From: Chrysemys picta bellii
Taxonomy: Eukaryota
NCBI RefSeq assembly: GCF_011386835.1
Contig: NC_088797.1
Coordinates: 34,410,001-34,474,000 of the forward strand
Length of the DNA stretch: 64,000 bases
Reading direction: 5' to 3'
Part shown: piece after piece, positions 1,308 to 29,720 of the stretch
Layout of the letters: each line of letters opens with the position of its first letter
Position numbering within the stretch: position 1 is the stretch's first letter
The notes under the pieces: generated by a model
Databases searched by the model: none
What the model was told of the DNA's origin: nothing
The model's input: the letters and a program-made list of their open reading frames with translations, nothing else
Program-made: the position numbers and the translations under genes

Positions 1308-1496
1308 CTGTCGCTGTCCCCCTGGGACAGCCCCCGCCGGGTCCCCGATGCCCAGGGCGCTCTCCACGGTTCCCTTCTGCATTTCTCTCAGCAGTCCCAG
1401 CTCCAGGATCCCGGCCAGGCTGGCCTGAAGCCGCTCCCCGATCCGCACTCGGTCGCTCCCGGACCAGAGGGAGGGCGGCACAGCTCTGCGGGCCAT
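1308..1496 (-). CDS. DACT4: First coding exon of a DACT/Dapper-family gene, probably DACT4 (partial; further exons lie left of the window)
   Basis: The ATG at 1496 (minus) encodes MARRAVPPSLWSGSDRVRIGERLQASLAGILELGLLREMQKGTVESALGIGDPAGAVPGGQRQ (63 codons). It ends at a CAG|GTGAGA donor (GT at 1307-1306), phase 0. The core RIGERLQASLAGILELGLLREMQKGTVESAL matches the DACT N-terminal motif (human DACT1 [31 protein letters not shown]). The exon is CpG-rich. Family assignment is strong; DACT4 identity is inferred from synteny. Confidence 0.75.
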
Positions 1497-1977
1497 GAGG
1501 ACCGCCGGGGCAAGCGACACCGATCAGCGGGGTGGGGGTGGGGGCTTGCACCGGGGAAGGGACTGGGGGCGCAGCTCCTGGGGAGGTACATACACCGGGA
1601 ATAGGAAAAAAATAGAACTGGGGGCAGTGTATGCACCAGGGGCAGGATCGACTAGGCGAGGAAGGAGGTGCAGCAACCAGGACTCACCGGGTACAGCAGC
1701 TGCAGAGGGAAGTGTGCACCGCAAGCAGGAGCAGGATGCCGGGAGGGGGGTAAATTGCATGCACGGGGCAGGATGGGTGGGAGAGTAAATTACATCCACC
1801 AGCAGCAGGGGTGCTGGTAAGTCGCATGCACCGGGAGTAGGCTGGGGGATGATAAGTTGGATGCACCATGGGGGAGCTGGACGCACAGAGGCAACCCCCA
1901 GAAGCCGCCACCGGCTCCTCTTGCCAGGGACTTTCAGCACACACAGCAGCTCAAACAAAGGGGCTGGTTTTGAAAGA

Positions 1978-2019
1978 GTCACGTGGGGGCGGGGCCAAAG
2001 GCCCCGGGCTCCTGATTGG
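1978..2019. promoter_or_regulatory. Promoter module (E-box/CLEAR-like, GC box, CCAAT) between the divergent DACT-like and LC3C-like genes
   Basis: GTCACGTGGG at 1978-1987, an overlapping GGGGCGGGGC at about 1986-1995, and ATTGG (CCAAT on minus) at about 2015-2019, in a CpG-containing segment. Confidence 0.5.
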
Positions 2020-2644
2020 GTCCGACCCGGGCAAAACATTTCGTAGAACGAAGTGAGGATCAAAGGGGAGTAGACGGTAAATCCTGTATCCCCTCCCCCC
2101 CCCCCGTGCACCAGGGGGCCAAAAACCCATTAGACCCTCCCTCAAATGCACTATGGGGCAAATACCCGCAAACACACCCCGAGGGGTAAAATAACCCCAC
2201 TGCACCCCCCAGAATACAGCATAGGGGGCACAGGCCCCCATTACCCCATGGGAGGGTGAAATGCCATCCAAATCCTGCGAGGGGCCAATGTCCCCAAATC
2301 CTTCCCCCAGTGAGGGGCAGATTCTCCCCCAAATATAGCCCCAGCTCCCTTGGGGACAGGTCACTTCCCCATGCCCCGGACCAGCGACACCTCCCATAGC
2401 AGCCCCGGGCCCGACCCCACCTTGGCCGGCGGGGGGAGTGGGCCTTGGGAGTGACTGTGAGTCCGTGCCTGGGCTTGTTCGTCCATTCTCTCTCCCCCTC
2501 TTCCACCCCGGGGCCCAGCCATGTGGGCTCCTGCTTGCGGCTCTTTACGGAGCCAGGCAAAGGGATTCAATAACCATGCGGCCGAATTCCCCTCTAGCCG
2601 CTGGACGTGCATGGGGTGTCGGAGGTGGGGGCACCGCAGGGGGC

Positions 2645-2930
2645 AGGGGCAACTAATACACCTCCCTCTTTATCGCACATCCATGGGTGGCGGGGACAAT
2701 TAACAGATCCCCCTCTATCCCCATCATAGGGGGCAATTAACTGACCCCTCTACCATAGAGAGCAGGGGTAATTAACAGACTCCTCTCTACCCCCCATCCA
2801 TGTGGGGCATGGGCAATTAACAAGACCCCTCGGCCCCTCTGTTCCCCCATCTTAGAGGACAGGGGCAATTAACAGATAACCGCTTCCATCCCCATCATGG
2901 GGGGGGGGTACAGTTAACAGACTCCCTCTT
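2645..2930. repeat. Degenerate minisatellite (35-52 bp units) with core GGGGCAATTAACAGA
   Basis: (C/T)AATTAAC at 2697, 2734, 2769, 2814 and 2866, with variants at about 2650 and 2911. Most copies are followed by a CCCCTCT..CCCCATC tract. Confidence 0.8.
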
Positions 2931-3139
2931 CTCTGAGCAGAAGCAAAATCAGCCCATAGAGAAGAAAAACCCTCCCCCCGCTTCAGTGCCCTGCTCCCCA
3001 CCAGGAGCCCCCAGTCCCGTCAGGGCCCTTGCGCTCCCCAGTAGCAGCAGGGACCTGGCCTTAGGGATTCCCCCGCGGGCGGGGCGAGTTGCAGGGGGAT
3101 CCTGCTGCAGCTGGAGCAGCGCTGCGGCGCAAGCGGCGC

Positions 3140-3147
3140 TATTTAAA
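3140..3147 (+). promoter_or_regulatory. TATA-like box of the LC3C-like gene
   Basis: TATTTAAA 50 nt upstream of the ATG at 3190, in GC-rich context. Confidence 0.55.
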
Positions 3148-3189
3148 GGGCTCCGGGGGGTAGGCGAGCCCCGCTCAGCACCCTGCAAG

Positions 3190-4681
3190 ATGCTGCCAGT
3201 TACCAGCAACCGGGAGCCCCGCGCTCCCTTCAAGCAGCGGAAATGCTTCGGTGAGAGAGGAGCCCCTGGGCGGGTCCCTGCAGGGAGAGACTGGTTAATT
3301 CGAGGGTAGGGCGTCCCCTGTGGGGAAGCCCCTGGGCGGACCTCGGGGTGCCCTGCCCTCTTCCCCTCTGTGGGCTCGGAGCGGAGAGCCCCCCCGCCCC
3401 AGGAGCTAAACAAGGGGGCTGGACTGGAGCTCCCCCTGCATCTGGGGTGCGGGGAGACCTGCTCCGGGCTGGCTGCCTGTCCCTGCCCCACCCCCGGCGG
3501 GGGGCCGGCCCGGCCCGGATGGTCCGTCTGAGTATCCAGATCTCAAAGGGTGCTGCCCGCGCGGGGTCTCTCACGATTTTCAGGGGTCTCTGCTGGGGGA
3601 AGCCTTGGCTCGGCCCCCGTGACTGTGACCCTCCTTCCCGGGTCCGCTTCTCATTCCAGCTACTAGGAAACGCGAAGTAGCCGCGGTCCGCTCCAAGTTC
3701 CCCAGCAAACTCCCGGTGAGTGGGCAGGGCGACCGCTTGGCGGGAGGAGGTAGGGCGTGGGGGGCGCTTAGCGTGTAGCCTGGGGCCAAGGACACCAGCC
3801 ACTGCGTGGGAAATAGTCCCTCACCTCTTCTCTTCCCCCCCCCCACTCCGCAGGTGCAGGGAAAGGGTTGGGGGGGGGTGCCCATCTCAGCAGCGTGGCC
3901 TCAGGGAGGGGTGCTGCCTCCCTCCCTTTCCCACGTGTCTGTTTTCCAGGTGATCCTGGAGCGGTACCCCAAGGAAAAGGTGCTGCCAGCATTGGATAGA
4001 ACCAAGTTCCTGGTCCCTCAGGAGCTGACCATGGGGCAGTTTGTGACCATTATCCGGTAAGAGAAGAGAGGAGGTGTGTGATTGGAGGTGGGGGTCTGGC
4101 TTGGTATTGCACCCTTGGTGTCTGTGCCCCAGGTGCTGCTTCTGTCTCTGACCTGAGACACCATAGGGGGGGTGCTGTGACCTGGGCAGTCATTAGCCCC
4201 CTTAGGATGCCCCTGGCTGTGTTTCAGGGGTGCCATACAGCTTTGGGAGAGGTGCTACCAAAGGCTAATGCAGAGACTGCAGCTCTCTGAACAGCCCTTT
4301 CTTGTTCCAGGATGCCCTGGGTAGGGGACCCCTGTTCTCCTTGGCTGCTGTTGTGGGTTAAGTGCAGGGGTGGCTGTGAGCAAGTACAGGCAATGCCCAG
4401 GTAGTGCAGTTCCCCCCTGGGCAAGGCAGGCAGTGGGTGCTCTCAGGGGAGACCAGTCAGTGCTTTCCCTTCTTACCTTCAGATGGGACTCAGCTCTCCT
4501 GCCTTCTTGCTTCTCCAGGAACAGGATGGCCCTCAGCTCTACCCAGTCGTTCTACTTGCTGGTGGATGGTAGCCGGAGCCTGGTCAGCATGTCACTCACC
4601 ATGACTGAGGTGTACACACTAAACCGAGATGAGGACGGGTTCCTCTACATGACCTACGCCTCCCAGGAGATGTTTGGCTAA
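3190..4681 (+). CDS. MAP1LC3C-like: MAP1LC3C-like ATG8-family protein, 4 exons, 128 aa
   Basis: Exons 3190-3250, 3660-3715, 3950-4056 and 4519-4681, all GT-AG and phase-consistent (387 nt). Protein: [128 protein letters not shown]. The motifs [16 protein letters not shown] and SLVSMS are LC3C-type. Confidence 0.93.
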
Positions 4682-6078
4682 GGCCACTGGTTGCCTCGGA
4701 CTCCTGGTCTTCTGAGAGGAGCCATTCTTGCCCATTCTAATGTTGCTGCTTGGTAAATGGTGTCATCCCACCCCCTCCGGTCAGAGTAGGAATGATATTC
4801 CTACCTGGCCAGTGGGGCATCTACCCTGGTGTGCTGAGATGCCAAGGAACCTGCCCATTTCCTTCCTTCCCCAGGTGGGTGCCTGGGTAGACTTGCTTCA
4901 AAGGGAAAGATCTGACTCCAGAGTGAGGGCCCCTTTAGCTCAGAGCAAGTGCTTTCACCCTGTGTCATGCGGTGCCCATGGGATGGTCCTTTCTGTGTTG
5001 TGGGGATAGTCACACCCACCAGTCTCTTGCACTGGTGCCAGTGTGATTCTCTCACCCCCCCCCCCGTGAGACCAATAGGACCCCATTGCTTAAGGGGTGG
5101 TGTTGTAGGACACTGCTCAGTGCTGGCTCCGAGTTCCTGCTGCACCACCTGGGGCTGCTAAAGCCCAGCCTGTTCCCTCTGACCTTGGGATAGAACTCTC
5201 ATGGTAGTAGCTTTTGGAATAAGAGGAAGTAAACTTATCTTCCAGCAACTTTCCTAGCCCCAATGCTGACCCACTGGAGACCCTTCACCTCCCTGAACAG
5301 GGGTGAACCTCCTCCTCGAGGGCAGCCCTAGCTGTGGGGTAGACTGGTTCTCTTGTAAGGGAGGTTGAGTGGTGCAGGAGGGAAGGTAATCCTGCACATG
5401 GAATAAGCGTGGTCTGTCCTTTAGACTGCACATGTGTTCTCTTTAGAAGCATACCCTGTAACCACTAGTTAACCGTTAAACATGTTTCTGTAAATGCTTG
5501 TCTGTGTGAAATGGGACTGGCAATCCAATCCAGCATGGCTAAGCCACTGCAGTTGCTGAGAGTAATGACTGCACTGAGAGCTCCCCTGCCAGGTGCAAGC
5601 AGCTCATGCCACCAGTCAGTAGAGAGGCCTGAGGGGAGTGCACTAGTTACAGCTGTATTTAGAGCACATGGTCCCTTGGGCCTGTTATCTTGGTGCAAAT
5701 AACCTGTCCTGGATGGGAGGTTCTGTGCTGTGGTAACCCTGTCCTGGACCCACAACTGCTTAGCAGGCCCCAGTCTGAGCATTGTTTAGCTGGTGTGGTG
5801 TACTTTCCTCTCCAGTGCTGCGTAAAAGCTCTTGGATGCCGTGCTGGAAGCCTGTCTTCATTTCAGACAGATTACAGGCTGCTTTCTGCTGGCGGCTGTC
5901 ACTGATTCGGCAGTGGGCAAAGGAAAGCTGGGTTAAAAAGGCCTGTGTTATCTAAGCACCCAAAGCTTCTAAAGGTGTAGAGCAGGAGGGGGCTGAGATA
6001 GCAGCTAGTGTCTTTCCTGCTCCCTACAACGTGTGCATATACCAGGACCTCTCCTTCCATTGCTGCTGGGAAGACTGA

Positions 6079-6084
6079 TTTATT
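6079..6084 (-). terminator. Candidate polyadenylation signal for ZBTB3
   Basis: TTTATT on plus (AATAAA on minus), about 2.3 kb downstream of the ZBTB3 stop. Confidence 0.35.
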
Positions 6085-8382: not shown

Positions 8383-9780
8383 CTACGAGGGGTTCTCCAC
8401 GTCCTGTTTACAGCGCTTGGCTGCCAGGTCTTCATTGTGGGCCTTGCGGATGTGCCTGTACAGGTCCCCAGACTGGGTGTAGCTCCGCATGCAGTAGCGG
8501 CACTCATAGGGGCGCTCGCGCGTGTGCACAGTGGCATGGCGCCGCAGTGTGTAGGAGCAGGAGAAGGTCTTGCCGCACGTCTTGCAGGTGGGGACGTCCT
8601 CAGTGAAGATACCGAAGTTGGGGTGTGCCTCGTACTCTGGCAGGTACATCTGCTCATGCAGCGGTGGTGTCACCATGTTGGAGTAGCCCTGTCCACCCGG
8701 CACTGGGATCATGTGGTAGGGGAGATGCTCCTGTGGAAGGAAGCCGCCCTCTGAGGACACCTCCTCTATGCCACCAGGCTCCTCAAAGCCATCGGGGTGG
8801 CGACTGCAGCCCCCAGCTGGCCCCACCTCCACTGTGGGCCTCTGGAAGATGCTCTCCATCCTCATTTCCATGCTCCGCCTCTCCAGCTGCTCCACTGTGT
8901 CCGGCTCCTCGTCAGAGATCACAATGGCTTCCACCTTCACTTTGATGGGACCCCTGTCCAGCTCCTTGGGGTAGAAGCCATCTAAGTTGCCCACCCGTGG
9001 CTCCACGGCTAAGCTCTCAGGGATGGTTTCCAGGCCGGATGGTGCCTCTGCCACATTGCCTGGGGGAAAGTAGCTGTGGGAGATGGTTTCGGTGGAGCTG
9101 CTGGGGCTGGACAGGGAAACGTCTGCAGTGACTGGGGGGAGAGGCCTACCCAAGACAGGGCCACGGGGGGAGTCGCCCTCCATGCCTGGCTGGGTAGTAT
9201 CTGCCATGTCTGCAGTTGGTGCTGGAGGCTGCTGGGGGCCTGCTTTCTCCAAGGGGTTATTCTTCCACTCCTCCTTCTTGTTCTTTCCTGCCTCACACAG
9301 ATGCAGAGGTGGTGGCAGGACCTCAGGGCTCTGCAGCTGGCACTTGGAGGTGCTGGGCAGGAACTCAGAGCTGGCTGGGGAGTCCTCCTCCTTCTTAGTG
9401 CTGTCAGCCTCTGCCAGTGCCCGTGCCTGCAGCTTCTTCTTGCAGACCTTGACAATGTCATTCATGTGCAGGTAGCTTGCAGCAGCCAGCACATCCTCCA
9501 CTGGAGTGTCATTGAAGGCCAGCATGCCCTGGTACATGAACTCCAGCAGCAGCCCGAAGGCTGGTGCTGTGACAATCTCATTGTTGATGCAGACCAGATC
9601 CCGCTTGTCCAGCCGCTCCTTGTAGAACATGTGGAAGAAGGTGCTGCAGGAGGCCAGCACGGCCCGGTGTGCTAGGAACTGGGTGTTGCCCACCATGATG
9701 GTGCAGTCGCAGAGGAAGCCCTGGTGTCGCTGCTCTCGCAGGCTCTGCAGCAAGTGCTTACTGTGGTCAGGGAACTCCAT
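8383..9780 (-). CDS. ZBTB3: Zinc finger and BTB domain-containing protein 3, single coding exon, 465 aa
   Basis: N-terminal BTB domain [26 protein letters not shown]...[14 protein letters not shown] closely matches human ZBTB3. Two C-terminal C2H2 fingers ([21 protein letters not shown]; [22 protein letters not shown]). A splice acceptor (cttcag|cATG) lies immediately upstream. Confidence 0.96.
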
Positions 9781-10799
9781 GCTGAAGGGAGGTCAGGAGG
9801 ATGGAGCAGCAGTTGGCATAACCCTGAGCCCCCTGGGAGTGGGGGGGGAGAGAGAGAATCAGAGTTACCTTGCAGATGAAGGGGGTAAGGAAACATCCCT
9901 TCCCCACTAGACTGCCCCATAAGGGGCCCATCCCTCATGCTTCATATCTGTCCCCTTGCTGCCTCAGTCTGAGCTCCGTTCCTTCTTGGGCTCTACTGGG
10001 GCCTCACTTGCCCTGCACCTTTCATTATCTGTCCCTTACCCGCCCCCATCCCTTTCCCCTTCAGCCTGTTCCATTGTGGGCCCTCACACCTCATGTTGAG
10101 CCTCTCTATTCCCCTCCCGCTGCAAAGTGCCCTATCCAGAATCTCCTCTTCCTGTGGGCTACAGTAGCCAGAAGCCCCTACTCCCATCATCCCCCTAGGC
10201 AGGGCCCCCGCCCCAGGGTCAGGCTAGAAGCTGGTGCCCCCCAATATTCCCCAGCATTGGCTGTTGGCTAGAGCAGGCATCCCCCATTCTAGCATGGGTG
10301 GCGTGTGTTAACATGGCCCTGTCTCACCTTCCCCTAGTGACCCTGAGATGGGAGAGGAGCCTGCAGGGGTGTTAACCTGGGAGGGGAGAGGGCTGGCGTG
10401 GGGGTCTCTGCTCTAGGGATGGGGCCTGGGTGGGGAAGCCTGGGCAGGGAGGAGGTGGTTGCCCCCCACATTACAGCAGAAACTAGGCGAGGGGCACTTG
10501 GGGGTCCCAGGGGAGGGAGGTCAGGCCAGGGCTGCTCGGAGGGGGGGCAGGCAGAGGGCTGATTGGGGGGTGGGAGGAGCCGGGCTCAGGGGGATCCTGG
10601 TTTAGGGGGCTAGGGCCAGAGAGCGCCTGTCTCAGTTGGGGGGAGCTGGGCCGGGGGGTCCCGGTGGGGGGGGGGAGGGGCCGGTTCTGGTCCCGCGTGA
10701 GGGGAGCGGGGAGGGGCACGTTCTGGTCCCGCATGAGGGGAGCGGGGCCGGGGGGATCCCGGTGCGGGGGGAGGCGAGGGCGACTAGTCCCGGCTCAGG

Positions 10800-12400
10800 G
10801 GGTTCTTTGCCCCCTAGTCCCCACATCCCCACTCACCACAAAGCCGCGGCCTGAAAGGATCCGCCTACTCCCGCCCCCTGCTGCCTGCCTGTGCCACTTC
10901 TCCAACCTCTGCTGCTTGATTGGCTCGGAATCACTGTCAGTCTCCGGTTTCCCCCGAAGATTGGATACCGGCCGCTGTCATTCAATCTCCATTCCTGTCG
11001 ATTAGTTTGAAGCGCCCGTCCATCAACTCGACTCATCAGTTGATTGGTTTCCCATAAAATGTCACGCTCACGCTCTGCCCGCTGACTGGCCGCAGAAAGA
11101 TATTCCTCAGCCCTTCAGCCATCTCAACAGGCACTGGTCAGACCCGGGTCCTCCTAATGATTGGTCAACGCCCTGGTGTCACTCCACCAGCCCCGTCTGG
11201 TGATTGGTGGGATAACTTAGCCCTCCATTTCGTGTGGGGGCGGGACGTCGGTCTCCATAGTAGCCGATGAGGGGTGTGCGTGAGGGAGAGGCGGGGTGAG
11301 CGCCGCGGGAGCTATACTGTGTTCTCTCGGGGTTGGGCGGCAGAGCAGAAAGTTTGTTTTCTTGTTATTTGTTCGCTGCGATCCCTCAGCCGTGTTCCCC
11401 TCCCCGCCCTGCGCTCCTCACCCTGGCGGGGCGGGGTGGGGTCTCCTCCCCCCTCGGGGTGTCCGTGAAAGTCCCCTCGGGCACCAGGCAGCGGGAGGCA
11501 GCCGATACCCGACGGAGTGTCCCGGCCCCTCCGTAGGGGTTCTTGCTCCCCTCCCCCGGGCTGCGGCAGCCGAGGGGCGCCTCCCGCTATGGCCCGGCTC
11601 GGGCTCGTGGCGCCTGTCCCCGGAGGGCAGGGAGTCGGCCGCCAGGGGGAGCCGCGCCGCGGGCACGGGCCGGCGCGTTGCCAGCTGTCATTTCAAACCA
11701 GCCCCGGGGTTTGAATGTCAACGGGCGCGGGAGCCGGGCCCGCCTCTTCCTTCCCCGCCACTCGCCCGCCCGGCATGAGGAGACGGGGGTCGCTGCGCGC
11801 GGGGACTCCCGTGAGGCGCTCCACGCGCCTGGCGCAGAGTAGCGCGGAGGAGACGGTGAGAGCAGGGGGCGCCCCCGCGGGGGGCTTCGAGGGGGCGGGG
11901 AGCCCCGCGGGTCGGGCTGGGCGGCCCCGGCTCTGAGCGCGGCCGTTGCCGCCCAGGCCCTCAGCGGCTTTTAGGGGCTGGGGGGCAGGCTCCGGCCGGC
12001 GCGGCGCCCCCCGACCCAGCCAGCACCACGGCCCCGCGGGGCGCCTCCCCAACCCGGCCGGCGCGTTCGGCTGAGAACTCTGCCCCCCGAGCAACCTGGC
12101 ACTCGGAGCTCGGCCTGCGGGGCCAGCAATGCCGGGGCTCCTCCCCCCCCAGCTGGTGCCGCTCGGTGGGTGACGCGCGCGGTCCGAGGGTTTGTCATCG
12201 CGCCAGGACCCCCGAGCGCTGGGCAAGGGCAGAACAGGAAGAGGGGCCCGGGCAAGAAAGAGGCAAGTTGTGGAAAAGCTGCGCTGCTCTAGGCTGTGCC
12301 TGCCCGACAGCACCGCGGCACCGGTGCATGCAGCTCCCCTGCTGTGAGTGACATCCCCGCTTGCTTCAGCGCTGCGTGGGGTTCCACCGAATGGCTGGGT
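10800..12400. promoter_or_regulatory. CpG island with bidirectional promoter for ZBTB3 (-) and the PLD3-like gene (+)
   Basis: Very high CpG density. ATTGG (CCAAT) at 10919, 10960, 11043, 11160 and 11203, and a GC box GGGGGCGGGAC at about 11236-11246. Outward-facing splice donors at 10836 (-), 11296 (+) and 11856 (+). Confidence 0.75.
10837..10900 (-). other. ZBTB3: Probable non-coding first exon of ZBTB3 (5' boundary approximate)
   Basis: Minus-strand donor TGTG|GTGAGT (plus-strand 'actcaccaca' at 10831-10840) at the edge of the CpG island. It pairs with the acceptor at 9783-9782. Confidence 0.55.
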
Positions 12401-15400
12401 CTGTCGCTGTAATAAATCCTCCCTTCCAGCAGCCTAGTGAGGTCTGTCCCAAGGCTTAGGTCAGCTTAACTGTCTCCTGCGTGTGACTTTTTCACAACCC
12501 GGAGGCAGGCAGCTAGATCAAGCCCCAAGTTTTAAGTGTAGACCAGGCCTTAGTCTCATGCTAGTAGGCGGTTTATTGTTTAATCCAAAAGAAAATTGAG
12601 GTGACTTGATGACAATCTGTAACTGCTGCACAGGGAGGAGAGTTCTAACGGCAGCTGTCAAAGGCAGAATGCAATCCAATGGTTGGGAGCTGAAGACTCT
12701 GACTAGAAGAAAGGCACTTTTAACAGGGGGTGTAATTAACCATTAGAACAATTTACCCAGCCTCATGGTGGATTGCTCATCATCTGCAGTCTTTACATTA
12801 TGACTGGATGATTTTTCTAGTTCTGCTTTCGCTCAACCAGACGTTATGGGGTACAGTTGAGTGGGAAGTGATTTTGAGAATTTAAGAGTAAAAACCCTCT
12901 TGCACATCAGGCCAAAGTCATGAATTAAATTTTTTTTTGCTTTATGTTAATCAAATTACTTCCTTCTGAGAATTTTGACTTTTCTTCCTCCACCTTTTTT
13001 TCAGTTTCAGAGTAGCAGCCGTGTTAGTCTGTATCCGCAAAAAGAACAGGAGTACTTGTGGCACCTTAGAGACTAACAAATTTATTAGAGCATAAGCTTT
13101 CGTGGACTACAGCCCACTTCTTTGGCGGGCTGTAGTCCACGAAAGTTTATGCTCTAATAAATTTGTTAATCTCTAAGGTGCCACAAGTACTCCTGTTCTT
13201 TTTTTCAGTGTAAATGAAGTTACTTTTCAAAACAAAAAACAGAACTTTGTTTTGAGAGTGGGATACTTCAGCAACTTCCCAATTTGTTTTTCCTGCTTGA
13301 ATTTTTTTTCCCATCAGGGCATGAAATTCATTAAACCCAAAACCTTTTCTGGAACAGTTGGAGTTCTGATATTTTTTGGCCAAAGTGTTTTGTTAATAAA
13401 TCTCCAGCCAGCACTAGTTCCGGACTTGAGGCAGGAACTGCTGTACAAGGTTCTCTGGCCTGTGCTATGCAGGAGGTCAGTTTACATGATCAGAATGGTC
13501 CCTTCTGGCTCTAACATCTGTGACACTGTATTGCCTGGACTCCAGCCAATATCAGGACTCTGCAGAGACAGGTGCTTTGTCAACACACAGCAAGAGCCAC
13601 TCCCTGCCCTGGAGAGCTCACCCTGTACTCTACTCGACAAAGGCTGGGCGGGGAAACAGAGAGATTTGCCCAAGGTCATGTTTTTGGAAGATCCAGGACT
13701 AGACCCTAATCCAGTGACCTAGCCACTAAAACACGCTGCCTCCCTATGCCTTGGAGCTCCCCTTGCCATAGTGTTGGAGTGAAAAAAATGTCAGCAATTC
13801 ACTGAAGGTTTTAAACAGCCTGAATAAAAAACCCTCTCTCTGCTCAGAGAGTCAGGTTTCACTTCCTTGTCACTTGTGGTGTCACAAACCCACCAACTCT
13901 TCTGTTGCCTGTAGAGCCACTGCAGGTGGGCGAGGACTGAAGTTTTAAGATAAAAAAAAAAAAAAAAAAAAGGCAAGGAAAAGTGACCAAAGTTCATTTT
14001 ACAAAGAAAACATCCCTCTGTGCCAAGAACAAGCTTTCAGCCCCAAGGGGCAATTTCTTACCTGGGATTTGGAGTTACCTTGGGGGAAGTCTCTCACCCA
14101 GCACCATTATGGGACTATACTGGAGAGAGGTTTGGGTACCTGGTGTCCTCTCCCTCCTGATGGTTTATTACCCTGAGGCACAGGTCTCGCTGTTCTAAAT
14201 CCAGTATTGCCAACCCCAAAACCACTAACCAATCAAGAGGCAGGCCAGGTAGCAGGGTTACACAGTCTGGCTTCAGGCCCTGCCACTGTCTCAGTTTTTC
14301 TTCCATCTCACATCAAACCACCCACCACAGCTGGTGTTTTCACAGTATTGCTCTTCTGGGGGTGGTTTAGTACTATCAAACCTCCCCCTTTCAGTTTATC
14401 TGGGCTTTCGCTTGCTTATAGCAGTTCAGCCCTCCTAATAAGCTTCTATTCCCTGCAACTTAGACTTATTCCTCAACAAATACATATGCCCTACCCAGCC
14501 ACTCTGTGGCTGCCCCTTATGTTCCCTAGCAGGCCTGGTTTCTAGTTACATGCCATTGTCAGGGTCCCCTGGTGTCATTCCCTTCACCTGGGGAAGTGGG
14601 CTAAGTTTAGCACAAGTGAGGCTGAGCCCCTCCTCCCCCTTAAAGGACCAGTTCACCTCTGACCAACCCCAAGAAATAATGAAATTTAAAAACAAGAATA
14701 AATGTATGTTCCTTTTCATTTGAGCTCTTAGGGTCATGCCCAGGACACACCTAGGGACTGTTAGGAGCATACCTGGGTCATGTTTTCAAGCTTTTCTCTG
14801 CAATCACGAGGGCTAGAAACTTATTCTTTTTTAAGGGCAAGCTGCAATTCTTACAGGAGCTGAGGCTTTAGGTAAAGTGCCAAATGTAATGAGGATTAAC
14901 AGCGCTGTAAACTACAATCCCTTGTTAATTTGTAATCTCTGATGAAATTGAGCCTGCAGATGTGGGCAGCTCCCAGCGTCAGTGTCCAGCTCCTATTCTA
15001 CCTGGGAGAGGAATATTAACCAGGGCTCCACACTCCTCTACAGGTCCTGAGCGAGGTGCCTAGTGCTGAGGGAGGGAGCTTTCCCCTCGTTCTGCAGCCC
15101 CGGGCCAGCATCAAGGCCCACAAACTGCATCTTACTCCGGCCCGGGATCCATCGCCCACTCCAGCCAGTGATCCTACCCCCGTGCCAGCCATGGAGCCCT
15201 CGGCTGGGTCAGCCCTGGAGCCCTTGCCAATATTAACCAGGGAGCCTCCACTGCCCCAGCTCAAGGATGAACCCACCAGGACTGCGATGAAGAGAGGCCT
15301 TTCCCGGAAGCCAGCAGCAAGGCTGGAGGCTTCCAGGAGCAATAGATGGGTGGCACTGGACCAAGATGCCCACTTGGTGAGTTGCTCTGTCTTGTCTGTG

Positions 15401-18400
15401 CTGGTTTGCATGTCTGGGTCTGGAGTGATCCCTTCCCCCATTCTCCCTCACCCCTAGCTGTTACTGGTGGGTTAGCTCCTCCCAGTGCTCCACAGGGATA
15501 GGACGTTTGGTGCTGTACAGACTATGCAGATGGGCCGCTGTCTCCATTAGCCCCATGTAGCGTCTCTCAGGGACTGTGCAGCCTCTGGCAGAGCTGATAT
15601 CTGGCTATTTTTGTTTCCCTTCCAGTCACCCTATGTGAGGCTGAAGAGGCTGCAGATCTCAGAGGAGGATGAAGAAAAGGAGGAGCTTTTCCCCACCCGA
15701 AGTGAGAGCTCAGGGGAGAAAGAGGTAATGTGGTCCCTCCCTTCTCTAGCCCCTATGCCTCAGCCATCCTGGATTTCCCCCTAGAGGTGAGAGGGGTGTT
15801 CTGTGTCCACAGTCCCTTCTGCTGAGGCTGCCCACAATGGGACCAGTCAGGAACAGTTGTGCTGGGGACATCTGCCTGATGGACTGGGGTCAGCAAACAG
15901 CTATCAGATTAGAATGGGTTTCAGTCACTACTGATCTGGGGCTGGATCGGAGCCAGCACCCCCTAGAGAGAAAAGGCCCCGTGTCCCATTCCCCAGCCTC
16001 CTGAGCCAACCAGTCCTCCCTGATGCTGAGGCTGGATCGGAGCTGATGCCTTCTAGCAGCAAAAGGCCCCATCTCCCACACCCGACCTGACTGAGCCAGC
16101 CAATCCCTATGCACTGGGACTGGATCAGAGCTGGGGCGCTTTATCAGTGAAAGCCCCATATCCCATTCCCTGCCCCCCCGAGCCCTGTAGCTCCATGGAC
16201 AGTCTGGCCCTCCCATGAGTAATAGGGGTCTTGGGTTGTGGCTCTTGCTGATGCTACCCAGCCCACTCTAGGTGGGGCTTGGAGCAGCCTCACTGTGGCT
16301 GGCTAGCAGACCCTCACATTAGGCACAGGTAGTGGCTGATCCCAGGTCTCAGGCTCTGCAGCCCCCTCTGCCCCAACTTGTACCCCTCTATTGCTCAGTG
16401 CTGTTTTAGGCCATTCTTATCCTTGCACCAGAGGGACAATGCTTGGGGACTGGGGGCTGCCTCTCTCTCAACCAGGCTAAGGACCACCCTTTGGCTTGGC
16501 TGTCTCCCACTGCAGAAGCTGAACCTGGACTGGCAAGAGTTCAGAGATGAGAGAGCCCAACTGCAGGTGCTGGAGACTGCACTGCTTGGCTCAGAGACAG
16601 CCACTGTCACGGAGATCATGGCCCCCAGGCTGCAGGGCAAAGCGGCCAGCAACACCCCCAGGCTGCAGGGCACAGCTGTCTGGCTGCAAGGTGGGGCAGC
16701 CAGCAGTCTCCCTAGGCTACAGGGTGGGGCCCGCAGGTTGCAGGACAGGGCGCAGATCAGCACCCCCAGGTGGCAGAGTGCAGCTCCCAGACTGCGGAGT
16801 GTGGCATCTGGGACTCCAGTTCTGACAGAGACAGATACTCCCAGGGTGCGGCACGTTGCCCATGGAACACCGAGCTTGGCGATGTGGACAGAAACTGCAG
16901 CACTCAGGTCACCAGCTCCCAGACCCAAGAACCCAGGGAAGCCGAGCAAGGTAAAGGAGAGATCCACACCTCTGCACTGGAGTGTCCAGGTAGTCTATGT
17001 GCTGAGCTCCCTGCTCCATGTCTAGTTGTAGCACCAGGCTCCCTTCCTTGCCCCTCCACACTGGGTGCCTAACATAGTCTCCCTTTAAACAGCTGACCCA
17101 TTTCCTGACAGCCATGGCAGCTCCCCTCAGAGCCATACCCTAATGCCACAGGCAGGGAAGTAAGAGCACAGAGTTGCTTTCTCACACTGGCTGGGGGGCA
17201 GTCTCGGCTTGTGGGAGGGCATCATTGGCTCAACCGCTGTGAATGGAACATTCCCTGCCATGGAGAGCACTGTGCTCAGCAACCTTTCTCTGCACTGCAG
17301 CATTGGGTTCTGAACACTACTACTTGGAAGAGAGCAGAGCTGGTCCAACCAGCCCCCGTCCTGTCCCTGGAAGGGTTGGATGGACACAGATATGGGTCCT
17401 TGTCCATGGGGCTCCTGGAGAAGTGTCCCTTTGTTATGTTGGTTCCTGCCCAGGCAGGGCTCCCCACTAAGCGCTATTCTCTCTCTTGTTAGCATTTCCT
17501 TTTCTCGTCCACCTGCTGCATCCTTCTTCCCTTCCTGCTCATCTTGGGCTTCTCTGGTTGGTTCCTGTGGGAGCACAGCAGCCCTGTCTCTGTCCTGGGG
17601 TTGATGGAGCAGTGGCAGCTGGGCTGGAGCCATGTTGCCAGCTTGTGGAGAGAGCCAGAGGAGGAGTGCAGCCCACAGTGCAGGTAAGGGATCCTGCAGG
17701 GGGCAGGCTGTTACACGGAGGTGGTGGGCAGTAGCACATAGTGACAGCACAGACTCTGCAGGCGGTAGCAGATGGCTGTGCTTGGTCTCGGACTCAGCAG
17801 ATGCTTGGAGTGGAAGGGAGCTGGATTTTGCTCTGGTCTCTGCTTGTCCTGGCAAGTACTGATGCCCTCACTACCCCTGTTGAGGTGTCCATCTCCTAAC
17901 CCTGCCCATCTCTCCTCTCTCTCTGTGGCTGCTGCAGTTTGGTGCTGGTGGAAAGCATCCCTGTGGGCCTGGATTACAAACACTTCAACTCCCGCCACCT
18001 CCCCATTTTCCAGGCCTGGATGGACCTGTTGGATGCTGCCAACCGCTCTGTGGACATCGCAGCTTTCTACTTCACTCTCCGGGACTCAGACATGCAGGAG
18101 GAAGAACCCTCATCCTGGCAGGTGGGCTCAGCACAGGTGGAGGAAGCCCTTATCAGTTCCTGTTCTGGGGTGAGAGGGAAGGAAGGGGTTGCTAAGCCAT
18201 AACACTCATGCTGCTCCCTGCAGGGCAGGCAGGTGTTGGAGAAGCTGCGGGACCTGCCTTCTCGGGGGGTGAAGCTCAACATTGCTGTGAATAGCCCCCA
18301 GAAGTCTGACCGGGACACCGAGGAGCTGGCCAGCAAAGGTAACATAGGGGTCGGGACAGCCCCCGAGCCTGGGTGGGGATAGGGGCATGAGGGGAAGTGT

Positions 18401-21400
18401 CAGCCCTAGGAAAGGGGCAGACAAGACCCCACCCAGCTGTGCTGGGATAGCCAGGCTGAGAGAAGCGGGAAAGGATGTCTCTGTGTGATAGCCACTGTTC
18501 TGCTGGTGCCCCCTGCAGGTGCAGATGTAAAGTATGTGGAGTTGGAGCGCCTGACTGGAGGAATTGTGCACACCAAGTTCTGGGTGGTGGATGGCAAGCA
18601 CGTTTACATTGGCAGCGCCAACATGGACTGGCGCTCGCTGACACAGGTACCACAGCGGGTAGAGGGCAGACAGAGGGGAGGTTACTCACAGGGACTGGCA
18701 CTCGAGAGGGTGTGGAAAGAGGGGAGGTGTGCTCACAGGGACTGGCGCTCACTGACACAGGTACTGCAGGGGGCACGCAGGGGGACTGAGTGCTCACAGG
18801 GACTGGAGCTCACTCTCCTGGGTCCCTGTGGGGCAGGGTTAGGACTGGAGCTGGGGCTCATGTTGGAGTTGGGCATTGGGCAGTGTGGCTGGCTGCCCAC
18901 TGGGGCTGCACTCACTCTCCTGGGGTTTAGAGTTCAGCCTGGGGCTCCTGTTGGAGCTGGGGCAAGGTCATGTTTGCTGCGTGGCTGTTCCCAAACACCT
19001 CTTCCTTGCAGGTAAAGGAGCTGGGTGCTGTGCTCTACAACTGCAGCTGTGTGGCTGGTGACTTGCACCGGATCTTCGCCATGTACCGTGCATTGGGAGG
19101 GCAGGGGGCCTCACTCCCGACGGTGTGGCCGGCTTATGTCTCCGCGAAGTCCAGCCTCAGCCGCCCCCTGAAGCTGCAGCTCAATGGCAGCAGTGCAGAA
19201 CTGTACCTCTCCGTAAGTGTCCAAGTAGGCTCTGTCGGGTCAGGCAGCAAATCGTGGCTGCTTCCTGGACTCTGGGGCTGGCCTGGATGGCTCTCCAGTG
19301 CATGGGGGGCAGCCACCTAGAACTCTCTGCCAGGGGCCTCTCCCTGTCTCAGGAGGCCCTGTTACTCGCTCCCCAGAGTCTGTGCTGTGGCACACACTGA
19401 CCCTGAGGGGTTCTGAGCCCCAGAAGGCCCCGTCATTCGCTCCTGGATTCTGTGCTGACACACGTCCTGCCTGTTTCTGTATCTGTGTTCGTTTGTATTG
19501 CAGAGCTCCCCTCCCGCCCTCTGCTCCACTGGCCGTACCCCAGACCTCACAGCCATTGTCAGCACCATCCAGGATGCCCAGGCCTTTGTCTACATCTCGG
19601 TGATGGACTATGTGCCCCAGTGCACCTTCTGCCAGCCTAAGAGGTGGGGGCCACAGGATGTGCAGGCTGAAAGTGGGGTACAGGCAGTCAGCTCCCCTGA
19701 CATTGTCTCTTCTAGACACAGCTGGGAGTCCTGTGCTATCCTCCCCCATGAGGCTGGCAGCAGGGACAACCTGGGCTCTGCAGACAGTGAGGATGGGGAG
19801 GAGAGATGGAGGGCCAGACACAGGCTGGCACTAGTGAATGTCAGATAAATGGCTGGGGGTGGGCAAGGTGGGGTGCTGTTATTGGGGAGCTGGGCAGATG
19901 GGGGGTGGGTGGGCTGGACCATGACCTGGGGACTGGGCTGGTTGGGGAGAGGGGAGGGAAGTTGGGTGGCTCTGACCCAGAGGGTGGGCAGTTGGGAGAC
20001 CATGGCCTGAGGGCTGGGACCCGGGGGCTGAGCAGTTGTGAGGCTGTGGCCCAAGGTCTTGGCATTTGGGGGGCTGGGGGGCTGTTGTATGTGAGGTGTC
20101 CTGTCCCCTGACCTGGTCTCCTTGGGCTGCCCTCCAGGTTCTGGCCGGTCATTGATGATGCACTGCGTGCTGCGGCCTGCAACAGGCACGTGAAGGTGAG
20201 GTTGCTCATTAGCTGCTGGCAGCACTCGGACCAGTCCATGTTCCTGTTCCTGGAGTCGCTCAGTGTCCTCAGCCGGGAGCCTCTGGGCTGCCCGATCGAA
20301 GTGGTGAGTCCTGGAGTGGTGCAGGAATAGGGACCTGAAGTGCCTGGGGCTGGGGCTGGCTGGGGGACCGTTCCACTCCATGACTCAGCCCAGGGGCCAG
20401 CTGGTAGGAAGTTCTCTCTATGTCAGTGCCTTGCATTGGCAAGGGGTCACAGATTACCTCTGTAATCTTTTTTCAACCTTTGTGTTGAAAAGTTCCCAAT
20501 TAATATTAAGTTGTTAAAGCTAAATTGCAATAAAACCATCTTAGTTTTCAGTTTTGAGCCTCTAGTCAATTACAGAAAATGTATTTAGTAGAGGACCACT
20601 AGGTGACACTTTGAATGCTACAACCAAACTTTATTAAAAAGAAAAATCCTTAGATAAGCAAACAGGCACGCCATTATCACTTACACAGTACTACAATCTT
20701 AGGCCAGGTCTACACTATAAACTTACATTGGAATAATTACATTGCTTATCCAGGGTTGTGTCCTTGCTAACGCTTATTTTCTCATAAGATGGTATCTCCA
20801 GCTTATCTCTAACTTTCTCACACTAGCAATGTCAGTTTCCCATACTCCTCTACACTTAGGTTTTGGGCCTAAGTTAGCTTAACTTTTACTTATTTCTTAA
20901 CCTAAACCATCCTTTGTAGGTTATACCAGGACATGCTAGACCTATAGGCTCAAAGGTGACTTTGTGTTTGTCTCTTTCAGAAACTCTTTGTTGTCTCCAC
21001 GTCGGTTGAGGAGAAACAGATTCCCTTCTCCCGTGTCAACCACAACAAGTACATGGTGACCGACCGCCTAGCCTACATTGGTGTGTGCCTCCCCAGCTAT
21101 GGGGTGGGGGATCAGCCCAAGGGTCTGGAATCATGGGCTAAGCAGGCCAGAGAAGCCATCACTGGGACCAGTTACAGCATTTCAAAGTCCAGTGATGGGT
21201 GGGAGTTTTGGGAGCCAAGACTCCTGGGTTCTTCCCCAGAACTGGGAGGGGAGTGCGGTTCAGTGGGTTAGAGCAGAGAAGGGGTGTTAGCCACGATTGG
21301 GCCCCTGAATGAGTCAGTGTTGATTCCCTGCAGACTTGATGTTTGCTCCTCTCTTGGCAGGCACCTCAAACTGGTCTGAGGATTACTTCACCAACACTGC

Positions 21401-21554
21401 AGGGGTGGGGCTGATCGTCAACCAGAGTGACGCTGCTCCTGGGGTTACGCAGCTCACCCTGCGGGAGCAGCTAGAAGCTGTGTTCCATCGAGACTGGAGC
21501 TCTCCCTACTCACAGCCACTCAGCCCCAAGCCCAGCTGTGCCACCAAAAACTGA
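11775..21554 (+). CDS. PLD3/PLD4-family phospholipase D / 5'-3' exonuclease-like type II membrane protein (PLD3-like), up to 13 coding exons, about 788 aa (712 aa if started at Met 15191)
   Basis: Exons 11775-11855 (tentative), 15044-15376, 15626-15724, 16516-16950, 17493-17683 (TM: [25 protein letters not shown]), 17938-18121 (LVESIP), 18224-18338, 18519-18646 (HKD1 [20 protein letters not shown]), 19012-19212, 19504-19643, 20138-20303, 20981-21080 (HKD2 HNKYMVTD) and 21361-21554 (GTSNWS). All junctions are GT-AG and phase-consistent with no internal stops. The catalytic exons are secure; the 5' exons are less so. Confidence 0.88.
12660..12850 (+). mobile_element. CR1 LINE 3' fragment in PLD3-like intron 1
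   Basis: 'gtaattaaccattagaacaatttacc...gtggattgctcatcatctgcagtctttac...ctggatgattttctag' resembles the CR1 3' end (from memory). Confidence 0.6.
13005..13203. mobile_element. Penelope-like element terminal-repeat fragment forming a 77-bp inverted repeat
   Basis: 'tttcagagtagcagccgtgttagtctgtatccgcaaaaagaacaggagtacttgtggcaccttagagact...' is the abundant turtle Penelope-like end sequence (from memory). Arms at 13039-13115 and 13127-13203 are reverse complements with 2 mismatches and an 11-nt loop. Confidence 0.75.
15938..16190. repeat. About 90-bp degenerate tandem repeat, 3 copies, intronic
   Basis: Recurring 'gg(g/a)ctggatc(g/a)gagc...aaaggcccc..t.tccca...gagcc' at about 15938, 16030 and 16118. 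Confidence 0.65.
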
Positions 21555-23721: not shown

Positions 23722-27238
<3,517 letters not shown>

Positions 27239-29419: not shown

Positions 29420-29720
29420 TTAACTCGGGACGCGAAGCACTCGGAGGGAGAGAGGCTGGGGAGCGCCCACGTGGTTGGAGTTTTAAAGCCATCACTGTTC
29501 CCTCCCATTGCACAGCTCCCTCTGTACGTGACCCAGAAGCGCCTCTCCTGTTGCCTCTCTAAAGCCCCGCCCCCTTGTGACGCCATATAAAGGCGCCGGG
29601 CTATGGTATGTCGTGCTGTGACTGGGTGTGCGGCGTCTCGCTTTGCGGTTCTTTTCTCTTTGCTTTACGGTGGTCCCGCCCCGGGCTCCTCCCTTTTCTC
29701 TGCTAGCTAAGATGGCGGCG
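29420..29720 (+). promoter_or_regulatory. EEF1G promoter / 5' TOP-like start
   Basis: CpG island with E-box CACGTG (29468-29473), GC box (about 29564-29574), TATAAA (29586-29591), pyrimidine tract TTCTTTTCTCTTT (29649-29661) and YY1-type AAGATGGCGGC (29709-29719) overlapping the ATG. Confidence 0.7.

What the first reader, a model, noticed from the sequence alone, without database searches (positions are those of the whole stretch)
1308..21554. Cluster of three intact-looking genes (DACT4, LC3C-like, PLD3-like) with no known counterpart at the human locus
Seen: a DACT-family exon, a complete LC3C-like gene and a complete PLD3-family gene are interleaved with ZBTB3, POLR2G and EEF1G. Established: human 11q12.3 carries ZBTB3, POLR2G, EEF1G, TTC9C and AHNAK but none of these three genes. 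The paralogous segments are 1q43-44 (MAP1LC3C, PLD5, ZBTB18), 14q32 (ZBTB42, PLD4, AHNAK2) and 19q13 (TTC9B, PLD3, PRX, with DACT3 further along). Inference: this window preserves the fourth whole-genome-duplication copy of that block, including genes lost in mammals. Two of them (an ATG8 protein and a PLD3-type exonuclease) plausibly act in the autophagy/lysosome system.
Basis: partly seen in the sequence, partly recalled or inferred. Interest (0 to 1): 0.82.

Follow-up and report, generated by a model that had tools for sequence, protein, structure and literature searches.

The report
Turtle DACT4, LC3C-like, PLD7 gene cluster
A painted-turtle locus holds three intact, ancient duplicate genes (DACT4, an LC3C-like ATG8 and a fourth PLD3-type enzyme, "PLD7") that humans lack, but all three are already annotated, two are in the literature, and marsupials still carry PLD7 at the same spot.

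Summary
The window is Chrysemys picta bellii chromosome DNA. It holds DACT4 exon 1 (1308-1496, minus strand), a complete 4-exon LC3C-like gene (3190-4681), ZBTB3, a complete 12-exon PLD3-family gene (11715-21554), POLR2G and EEF1G.

- All three genes belong to old, separate paralogue groups with coelacanth and lungfish members; PLD7 and DACT4 also have shark members.
- The same genome has matching blocks: LC3C-PLD5-ZBTB on C3, ZBTB-PLD4 on C4 and PLD3-TTC9B on C17.
- The PLD tree gives ((PLD3,PLD4),(PLD5,PLD7)). This matches the published (Dact1,Dact3),(Dact2,Dact4).

Three points weaken the claim.
- Schubert et al. 2014 already described turtle Dact4, its linkage to Ttc9, Map1lc3c, Zbtb3 and Polr2g, and its origin in the two vertebrate genome duplications (2R).
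- map1lc3cl is already listed as having no human orthologue, and pld7 is a database name. RefSeq annotates all three genes.
- "Lost in mammals" is wrong for PLD7. A dunnart has it, with both HKD motifs, between ZBTB3 and POLR2G.

PLD7 keeps every PLD3 active-site residue. I found no paper on it. Overall the finding is ordinary, with one under-studied gene.

The parts
1308..1496 (-). DACT4 coding exon 1. The ATG is at 1496 and the GT donor follows 1308. The rest of the gene lies upstream of the window, at window -5627 to -9237.
   Evidence: 100% tblastn match to P0415 residues 1-58. An RNA contig joins 1308 to exon 2 at -5627. Pfam Dapper domain on P0415.
3190..3250 (+). LC3C-like (map1lc3cl-type) exon 1, ATG at 3190
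   Evidence: tblastn with Carettochelys P0003, plus a GT donor. The junction to exon 2 was not seen in RNA contigs, which run unspliced through 3024-3714.
3660..3715 (+). LC3C-like exon 2
   Evidence: The 3715/3950 junction is present in 4 runs.
3950..4056 (+). LC3C-like exon 3
   Evidence: Spliced on both sides in RNA contigs of 4 runs from 3 studies.
4519..4681 (+). LC3C-like exon 4. The stop codon directly follows the C-terminal glycine (...QEMFG*).
8383..9780 (-). ZBTB3 single-exon coding sequence (context gene)
   Evidence: 465-aa ORF. BTB and C2H2 Pfam domains. The closest paralogues lie on C3 and C4.
11715..11855 (+). PLD7 exon 1. It carries the N-terminal RRSTRL motif and lies in the CpG-rich interval shared with ZBTB3.
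   Evidence: GC content 0.67
15044..15724 (+). PLD7 exons 2 (15044-15376) and 3 (15626-15724), encoding the cytosolic tail
16513..16950 (+). Optional PLD7 exon, present in the 808-aa isoform of other turtles and absent from the 663-aa isoform
   Evidence: 90% tblastn match to Gopherus P0305 residues 191-336
17493..17683 (+). PLD7 exon 4, holding the hydrophobic membrane anchor ([19 protein letters not shown])
17938..21554 (+). PLD7 exons 5-12, encoding the luminal catalytic domain: 17938-18121, 18224-18338, 18519-18646 (HKD motif 1), 19012-19212, 19504-19643, 20138-20303, 20981-21080 (HKD motif 2), 21361-21554 (stop)
   Evidence: Exact reconstruction of P0310 with all introns GT-AG. End-to-end alignment to solved PLD3 and PLD4 structures. 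Pfam PLDc_3, PLDc_2 and PLDc.
23722..26926 (+). POLR2G (context gene)
   Evidence: tblastn with the POLR2G part of the fused model P0335

Best explanation
The window is the painted-turtle TTC9C-POLR2G locus. It retains three functional genes that date from duplications before the gnathostome radiation, most likely the two vertebrate whole-genome duplications (2R).
- DACT4 is the sister of DACT2.
- The LC3C-like ATG8 gene (zebrafish name map1lc3cl) is the sister of MAP1LC3C.
- PLD7 (fish name pld7, RefSeq 'PLD3-like') is the fourth member of the PLD3/4/5 group and is closest to PLD5.

The pair LC3C-like/PLD7 on C7 mirrors the pair LC3C/PLD5 on C3.

Losses happened gene by gene. Eutherians lack all three. 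Marsupials lost DACT4 and the LC3C-like gene but kept PLD7. The ostrich keeps DACT4.

Inferred function:
- PLD7 is a type II membrane protein whose luminal domain has a complete PLD3-type active site. It probably acts as an acid 5' exonuclease and/or transphosphatidylase in endolysosomes.
- The LC3C-like protein is made already ending in the conjugation glycine, so it should not need ATG4 priming.

None of these activities was tested.
For: Gene models are intact and identical to RefSeq proteins.

RNA:
- Spliced RNA contigs cover LC3C-like introns 2 and 3 in 4 runs from 3 studies, and the DACT4 exon 1-2 junction.
- 14 probable RNA runs hold 0.27-0.39 of the words of PLD7 17400-21600. By my own sum of the exon lengths, about 0.35 of that stretch is exon.

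PLD phylogeny:
- The PLD7 clan has SH-aLRT 99.1 and ultrafast bootstrap (UFboot) 99. It includes shark, ray, bichir, gar, teleost pld7, coelacanth ('PLD family member 7'), lungfish, amphibian, reptile and marsupial sequences.
- The turtle's own PLD3, PLD4 and PLD5 fall in the other three groups.
- The AU test prefers PLD7+PLD5 (p 0.97) over PLD7+PLD3 (p 0.04) and PLD7+PLD4 (p 0.053).

LC3 tree: the LC3C-like clade (lungfish, coelacanth, turtles, squamates) has UFboot 87 inside an LC3C-type clade with UFboot 99.

DACT4: orthologues reach sharks at E 1e-39, while DACT2 hits are only E 1e-4 to 1e-5.

Paralogous blocks in the same genome:
- C3: LC3C at 138.405 Mb, PLD5 at 138.57-138.68 Mb, a ZBTB gene at 139.82 Mb, a DACT gene at 127.27 Mb.
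- C4: a ZBTB gene at 137.83 Mb, PLD4 at 137.995-138.005 Mb, a DACT gene at 143.84 Mb, TTC9 at 89.25 Mb.
- C17: PLD3 at 1.12 Mb, a TTC9 paralogue (read as TTC9B) at 1.236 Mb.

Synteny: alligator has the identical order TTC9C-DACT4-ATG8-ZBTB3-PLD7-POLR2G-EEF1G. The dunnart has TTC9C-ZBTB3-PLD7-POLR2G.

Active site: the six residues named for human PLD3 (H201, K203, N218, H416, K418, N432; PMC10783504) are all conserved in the alignment.

Published Dact4 synteny and 2R model: PMC4236578.
Against: - The ZBTB tree groups the C3 and C4 copies (UFboot 98) and leaves ZBTB3 outside. This is not the ((14q,19q),(1q,11q)) order seen for PLD and DACT. Its outgroups are very distant.
- Within the PLD7 clan the root falls between tetrapods and all other taxa, not between sharks and bony vertebrates.
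- Only two invertebrate outgroups were available.
- The LC3 alignment has 125 columns. The placement of ray-finned fish sequences is unresolved (support 20-59), and no shark LC3C-like sequence was examined.
- The LC3C-like exon 1-2 junction was not seen. Contigs retain intron 1, which would end the reading frame early.
- No enzyme or lipidation activity was tested.
- Absence from eutherians rests on established gene catalogues and the 2014 paper, not on a search here.
Confidence: 0.85

Rival explanations
1. The duplicates are ancient (pre-gnathostome), but they arose by one or more regional or segmental duplications rather than by the two whole-genome duplications.
For: Gene-tree order is not uniform across families: the ZBTB tree disagrees with the PLD tree. 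The LC3 family shows only two clear copies in the paralogous blocks, plus an unplaced third copy on C22.
Against: Five families (PLD, DACT, TTC9, ZBTB, LC3) each have members on two to four of the same four chromosomal regions, with local adjacency preserved. The PLD and DACT topologies are congruent (PMC4236578).
Confidence: 0.1
2. The three genes are recent, reptile-specific copies of DACT2, MAP1LC3C and PLD3, as their RefSeq '-like' names suggest.
For: RefSeq names them 'dapper homolog 2-like', 'MAP1LC3C-like' and 'PLD3-like'.
Against: Orthologues exist in coelacanth, lungfish and amphibians for all three, and in sharks for PLD7 and DACT4. The luminal domain of PLD7 is only 53% identical to turtle PLD3 but 61-62% identical to coelacanth and shark PLD7. 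PLD7+PLD3 is rejected by the AU test at p 0.04.
Confidence: 0.02
3. One or more of the three are decaying relics that are transcribed but make no working protein.
For: RNA contigs retain LC3C-like intron 1, which would truncate the frame. Marsupial PLD7 sits on a long branch, 0.56 substitutions per site.
Against: All frames are open and all introns are GT-AG. Across turtles the LC3C-like protein is 91% identical (and 80% to an amphisbaenian), the PLD7 luminal domain 87-89%, and DACT4 82-88%. Catalytic motifs are intact in turtle, alligator and three marsupials.
Confidence: 0.03

Closest known systems
DACT4 (Schubert et al. 2014, PMC4236578)
   Same: Same gene. It has four exons, a Dapper domain, linkage to TTC9C, an LC3 gene, ZBTB3 and POLR2G, and no C-terminal PDZ-binding ...TTV end (P0415 ends ...ASGASK). 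It was already reported in turtles.
   Different: Its spread is wider than published. Orthologues occur in ostrich, emu, kiwi, rhea, caecilians and salamanders, and the ostrich gene lies next to TTC9C. The paper said birds and amphibians had lost it.
MAP1LC3C / zebrafish map1lc3cl
   Same: ATG8 fold (PF02991), four coding exons, the conserved KFLVP and IIR docking-site residues, and an LC3C-type clade with UFboot 99.
   Different: It forms a separate clade from LC3C (UFboot 87) and is 70-72% identical to bird and bat LC3C. In turtles and squamates the protein stops at the glycine, whereas LC3C has a 12-25-residue tail that ATG4 must remove. Whether zebrafish map1lc3cl is its orthologue was not tested here.
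PLD3 and PLD4 (endolysosomal 5' exonucleases; solved structures 8v05, 8v08, 8q1k)
   Same: The luminal domain aligns end to end (E 2e-138 and 2e-123). Both HxKxxxxD...G(S/T)xN motifs and all six named active-site residues are conserved. It has an N-terminal membrane anchor.
   Different: It is about 53% identical to PLD3 and 51% to PLD4, and is phylogenetically nearer to PLD5. Motif 2 is a true HKD (D594), where human PLD3 has HKE. The base-stacking Tyr411 is Phe here. A cytosolic tail of about 190 aa carries conserved RRS(T/S)RL and PRxSI(K/R)xH(K/R) motifs that PLD3 and PLD4 lack.
PLD5 ('inactive phospholipase D5')
   Same: Closest paralogue in the tree, and next to an LC3C-type gene in the same way.
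   Different: Turtle PLD5 has lost the catalytic His and Lys (QSSFWIVD), while PLD7 keeps them.

Membership tests
PLD3/4/5 subfamily of the PLD superfamily | PLD-like domains (PLDc_3, PLDc_2, PLDc) above Pfam cut-offs | tested here: met
   PF13918 134 bits, PF13091 91 bits, PF00614 57 bits on P0310
PLD3/4/5 subfamily of the PLD superfamily | Two HxKxxxxD(x)6G(S/T)xN motifs in one chain, with the PLD3 active-site residues | tested here: met
   HTKFWVVD at residue 372 and HNKYMVTD at residue 587. H, K and N of both motifs align with human H201, K203, N218, H416, K418 and N432 (PMC10783504).
PLD3/4/5 subfamily of the PLD superfamily | Type II topology with a single N-terminal membrane anchor | tested here: inconclusive
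   A hydrophobic stretch, [19 protein letters not shown], lies just before the luminal domain. No topology predictor was run.
PLD3/4/5 subfamily of the PLD superfamily | Acid 5' exonuclease or BMP-synthase activity | not testable with these tools
   Needs a biochemical assay
PLD7 (pld7) orthologue group | One clan with fish pld7 and coelacanth 'PLD family member 7', apart from PLD3, PLD4 and PLD5 | tested here: met
   SH-aLRT 99.1, UFboot 99; source names
PLD7 (pld7) orthologue group | Position between ZBTB3 and POLR2G | tested here: met
   Turtle window, alligator and dunnart
ATG8/LC3 family | ATG8 domain and C-terminal conjugation glycine | tested here: met
   Every listed hit to the exon-4 query carries PF02991. 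PF02991 scores 125 bits on turtle orthologue P0004, which is 96% identical over exon 4. The window protein ends ...QEMFG*.
ATG8/LC3 family | Correctly spliced mRNA covering the whole coding sequence | tested here: inconclusive
   Introns 2 and 3 are spliced in 4 runs. Intron 1 is retained in every contig seen. Contigs cannot show absence.
LC3C-like paralogue group (distinct from LC3C) | Clade separate from canonical LC3C, with non-amniote members | tested here: met
   UFboot 87 with lungfish and coelacanth. The turtle's own LC3C (C3) falls with bird, crocodile and lizard LC3C. The alignment is short, so support is moderate.
DACT family / DACT4 | Dapper domain, four exons, linkage to TTC9C, no PDZ-binding C-terminus | tested here: met
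   PF15268 152 bits. Exon map. TTC9C at window -16008 to -15436. P0415 ends ...ASGASK.
2R ohnologue block (four-fold paralogous chromosomal regions) | Paralogues of several neighbouring families on the same four regions of one genome | tested here: met
   PLD on four regions, TTC9, ZBTB and DACT on three each, and LC3C-type on two, across C7, C3, C4 and C17
2R ohnologue block (four-fold paralogous chromosomal regions) | Congruent (A,B),(C,D) gene trees across families | tested here: inconclusive
   PLD agrees with the published DACT tree. ZBTB does not.
2R ohnologue block (four-fold paralogous chromosomal regions) | Each paralogue present in cartilaginous fish | tested here: inconclusive
A shark LC3C-like gene was not examined.

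The most novel reading that the evidence does not exclude
PLD7 is a fourth, catalytically active endolysosomal PLD3-type enzyme (a 5' exonuclease and/or BMP synthase). It is targeted or regulated through a long cytosolic tail with an HMGN-like RRS(T/S)RL motif. It is kept by most jawed vertebrates and by marsupials but lost in placental mammals. If so, placentals run nucleic-acid clearance and TLR7/9 control with one enzyme fewer. No paper on it was found in the searched library.
Probability: 0.4. Interest if true: 0.55.

Novelty: already known. Interest (0 to 1): 0.33.

Why it matters
The cluster itself adds little. The Dact4 locus and its 2R origin were published in 2014, and all three genes are annotated.

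Three smaller points are of use:
- PLD7 has a complete PLD3-type active site and sits closest to the 'inactive' PLD5, yet I found no paper on it. PLD3 and PLD4 are studied for lysosomal nucleic-acid degradation and BMP lipid synthesis (papers found). A fourth active paralogue in opossum, reptiles, amphibians and fish is therefore a ready comparative model.
- The pattern of loss is piecemeal. Marsupials keep PLD7 and the ostrich keeps DACT4. This corrects 'lost in mammals' and the 2014 statement that birds and amphibians lost Dact4.
- An ATG8 protein born with its glycine exposed offers a natural test of ATG4-independent lipidation in amniotes.

Tried and rejected
- First PLD tree: it was midpoint-rooted and included an odd 1091-aa protein, so PLD3/4/5 seemed to nest inside PLD7. 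This was a rooting artefact. I rebuilt the tree with named outgroups and the turtle's own paralogues.
- Exact-sequence look-ups failed for opossum, shark isoform X3, gar and coelacanth PLD7. The shark locus returned no neighbours within 10 kb and no DNA, so fine-scale shark synteny is untested.
- Literature searches for pld7 found only plasmids and plant genes.
- A look-up of earlier scan notes by words found nothing.
- One TTC9C search failed because I gave the wrong locus. I repeated it correctly.
PLD7 splicing is therefore supported only by RefSeq identity and word shares.
- I did not fold PLD7, because 53% identity to solved PLD3 makes the fold certain.
- I did not search any eutherian genome.
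Full report
**What is there**

The window is G000:C7:34410001-34474000. That contig is 129,391,836 bases long, the same as the record carrying the Chrysemys picta bellii RefSeq proteins P0310 and P0415. Both proteins map to this locus at 100% identity. The organism is therefore the painted turtle.

Gene order from the upstream flank into the window:
- TTC9C, plus strand, window -16008 to -15436.
- DACT4, minus strand. Exons 4 to 2 lie at -9237 to -5624, and exon 1 at 1496-1308.
- An LC3C-like gene, plus strand, 3190-4681.
- ZBTB3, minus strand, 8383-9780.
- A PLD3-family gene, plus strand, 11715-21554.
- POLR2G, plus strand, 23722-26926.
- EEF1G, with one exon visible in the ORF at 31886-32482.

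**Gene models**

The LC3C-like gene has four GT-AG exons: 3190-3250, 3660-3715, 3950-4056 and 4519-4681. They give a 128-aa ATG8 protein that stops right after the conjugation glycine.

The PLD gene has twelve GT-AG exons. Their translation equals P0310 residue for residue (663 aa). An optional exon at 16513-16950 matches the 808-aa isoform of other turtles.

Pfam confirms PLDc_3, PLDc_2 and PLDc on P0310, Dapper on P0415, ATG8 on a turtle LC3C-like orthologue (P0004, 96% identical over exon 4), and BTB plus C2H2 on ZBTB3.

**RNA**

Contigs of four probable RNA runs from three studies carry the junctions 3715/3950 and 4056/4519, both with GT..AG ends. The LC3C-like gene is therefore transcribed and spliced.

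The exon 1-2 junction was not seen. Contigs run unspliced through 3024-3714, and that form would end the frame inside intron 1. Contigs cannot show that the spliced form is absent. Exon 1 is conserved in other turtles, so I read this as intron retention.

One contig joins DACT4 exon 1 at 1308 to exon 2 at window -5627.

For PLD7, fourteen probable RNA runs hold 0.27-0.39 of the words of 17400-21600. By my sum of the exon lengths, about 0.35 of that stretch is exon. No reads were laid on PLD7.

**PLD phylogeny**

A library-wide HMMER search with one exon and a word-indexed search with the gecko orthologue recovered the family. Source names were obtained. I stitched the turtle's own PLD3 (C17), PLD4 (C4) and PLD5 (C3) from their exons.

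In a 412-column LG+G4 tree the window protein sits in a clan with SH-aLRT 99.1 and UFboot 99. The clan contains shark, ray, bichir, sturgeon, gar, teleost 'pld7', coelacanth ('Phospholipase D family, member 7'), lungfish, caecilian, salamander, tuatara, squamate, alligator and three marsupial sequences.

Rooted on the two invertebrate sequences, the tree is ((PLD3,PLD4+hagfish),(PLD5,PLD7)). An AU test gives:
- p 0.97 for PLD7+PLD5;
- p 0.04 for PLD7+PLD3;
- p 0.053 for PLD7+PLD4.

The RefSeq name 'PLD3-like' is therefore not a statement of descent.

**LC3 phylogeny**

The turtle genome has five LC3 loci:
- this one;
- LC3C on C3, about 170 kb from PLD5;
- an LC3A-type and an LC3B-type gene, on C13 and C14;
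- an extra LC3C-type gene on C22.

In a 125-column tree the LC3C-type genes form one clade (UFboot 99). It splits into an LC3C-like clade (lungfish, one coelacanth gene, turtles, squamates; UFboot 87) and a weakly held LC3C clade. The ray-finned fish sequences and the C22 copy are not reliably placed.

**DACT4**

The exon-4 ORF finds orthologues in turtles, tuatara, squamates, four palaeognath birds, caecilians, salamanders, coelacanth, lungfish, sharks and rays. True DACT2 proteins score only E 1e-4 to 1e-5. In the turtle genome the other DACT loci match weakly.

**Paralogous blocks in the same genome**

- C3 holds a DACT gene (127.27 Mb), LC3C (138.405 Mb), PLD5 (138.57-138.68 Mb) and the closest full-length ZBTB3 paralogue (139.82 Mb).
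- C4 holds TTC9 (89.25 Mb), the other close ZBTB paralogue (137.83 Mb), PLD4 (137.995-138.005 Mb) and a DACT gene (143.84 Mb).
- C17 holds PLD3 (1.12 Mb) and a TTC9 paralogue (1.236 Mb).

The PLD topology matches the published (Dact1,Dact3),(Dact2,Dact4) (PMC4236578). The ZBTB tree does not. It joins the C3 and C4 copies (UFboot 98) and leaves ZBTB3 outside, though its outgroups are very distant. The order of duplications is therefore not uniformly recovered.

**Who has the genes**

- The alligator has the same seven genes in the same order and orientation within 24 kb.
- The dunnart has TTC9C, ZBTB3, a 520-aa PLD gene and POLR2G in order. That PLD falls inside amniote PLD7 together with the opossum and Tasmanian devil proteins. 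All three marsupial proteins keep both HKD motifs, but they have a short N-terminal tail and a long branch.
- The 4.4 kb between dunnart TTC9C and ZBTB3 holds no recognisable DACT4 or LC3C-like remnant.
- Ostrich DACT4 lies beside TTC9C, but an actinin-like gene lies on its other side.
- The only bird PLD examined that was named 'PLD3-like' (Alca) is a true PLD3.

Losses were therefore separate events.

**What was already known**

Schubert et al. 2014 reported Dact4 in turtles, lizards, coelacanth, ray-finned fishes and sharks. They also reported its linkage with Ttc9, Map1lc3c, Zbtb3 and Polr2g, conservation of the locus in mammals, and a 2R origin. A 2018 review lists zebrafish map1lc3cl as having no human orthologue. 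'pld7' is a gene symbol in fish annotations, but I found no paper on it.

**Likely function (inferred, not shown)**

The PLD7 luminal domain aligns end to end with solved PLD3 and PLD4 (E 2e-138 and 2e-123). It keeps H, K and N of both motifs, which form the PLD3 active site (PMC10783504). Differences from PLD3:
- Asp in place of Glu423;
- Phe in place of the base-stacking Tyr411;
- a cytosolic tail of about 190 residues, with RRS(T/S)RL and PRxSI(K/R)xH(K/R) motifs shared by turtle, squamates, a salamander and coelacanth.

I infer an active endolysosomal phosphodiesterase.

The LC3C-like protein keeps the KFLVP and IIR docking-site residues. It ends at the glycine in turtles and squamates, has one extra residue in lungfish and five in coelacanth.

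**Verdict**

The evolutionary reading is largely right but mostly already published. The claim of loss in mammals is wrong for the PLD gene. What remains of interest is the uncharacterised PLD7.

Noticed in passing
L003:5500-6443 (window -4500 to -3557), minus strand, inside DACT4 intron 1: An intronless, full-length RPS10 copy with one in-frame stop (RHFY*YLTNEG) and an A-rich tail, so a processed pseudogene. RNA contigs of two runs splice the DACT4 exon 1 donor (1308) to a site at window -3540, just upstream of it. That suggests chimeric DACT4-RPS10 pseudogene transcripts.
   Followed up: partly
window 4477-4547, minus strand: RNA contigs in two runs join 4477 (GT donor on the minus strand) to DACT4 exon 2. 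This is an alternative DACT4 first exon lying antisense across the acceptor of the LC3C-like gene's last exon.
   Followed up: partly
window 3001-3024: A DACT4-linked contig reaches up to 3001 and an LC3C-like contig starts at 3024. The two genes therefore appear to be transcribed divergently from one short promoter region. ZBTB3 and PLD7 likewise face away from each other across the CpG-rich 9780-11715 interval.
   Followed up: no
window 3251-3659: Intron 1 of the LC3C-like gene is retained in every RNA contig seen (4 runs), while introns 2 and 3 are removed. The retained form cannot encode the full protein.
   Followed up: partly
L008 (G000:C22:496001-504000), minus strand: A third LC3C-type gene with four apparent exons, ending ...QEMFGCCCL. 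It sits on a long branch and is unplaced in the tree. It could be another old paralogue or a fast-evolving copy.
   Followed up: partly
L021 (ostrich CM081620.1:588730-610658); one search hit list: DACT4 orthologues exist in ostrich, emu, kiwi and rhea, and in caecilians and salamanders. The ostrich gene lies next to TTC9C. The 2014 paper stated that birds and amphibians had lost Dact4.
   Followed up: partly
window 11715-11855 and 15044-15376: The PLD7 cytosolic tail carries an HMGN-like RRSTRL motif and a PRASIKAHK motif. Both are conserved in squamates, a salamander and coelacanth; alligator has only the second. No match to either pattern was found in the caecilian, shark, bichir, teleost and marsupial proteins checked.
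   Followed up: partly
L006-L005 (window -37007 to -24304): Long ORFs with reverse-transcriptase-like and transposase-like sequence lie upstream of TTC9C, suggesting retroelement and DNA-transposon copies. This is by eye only.
   Followed up: no
window 29492-30871, minus strand: A 459-aa proline-rich ORF lies between POLR2G and EEF1G. It is probably a chance open frame in GC-rich DNA and was not examined.
   Followed up: no
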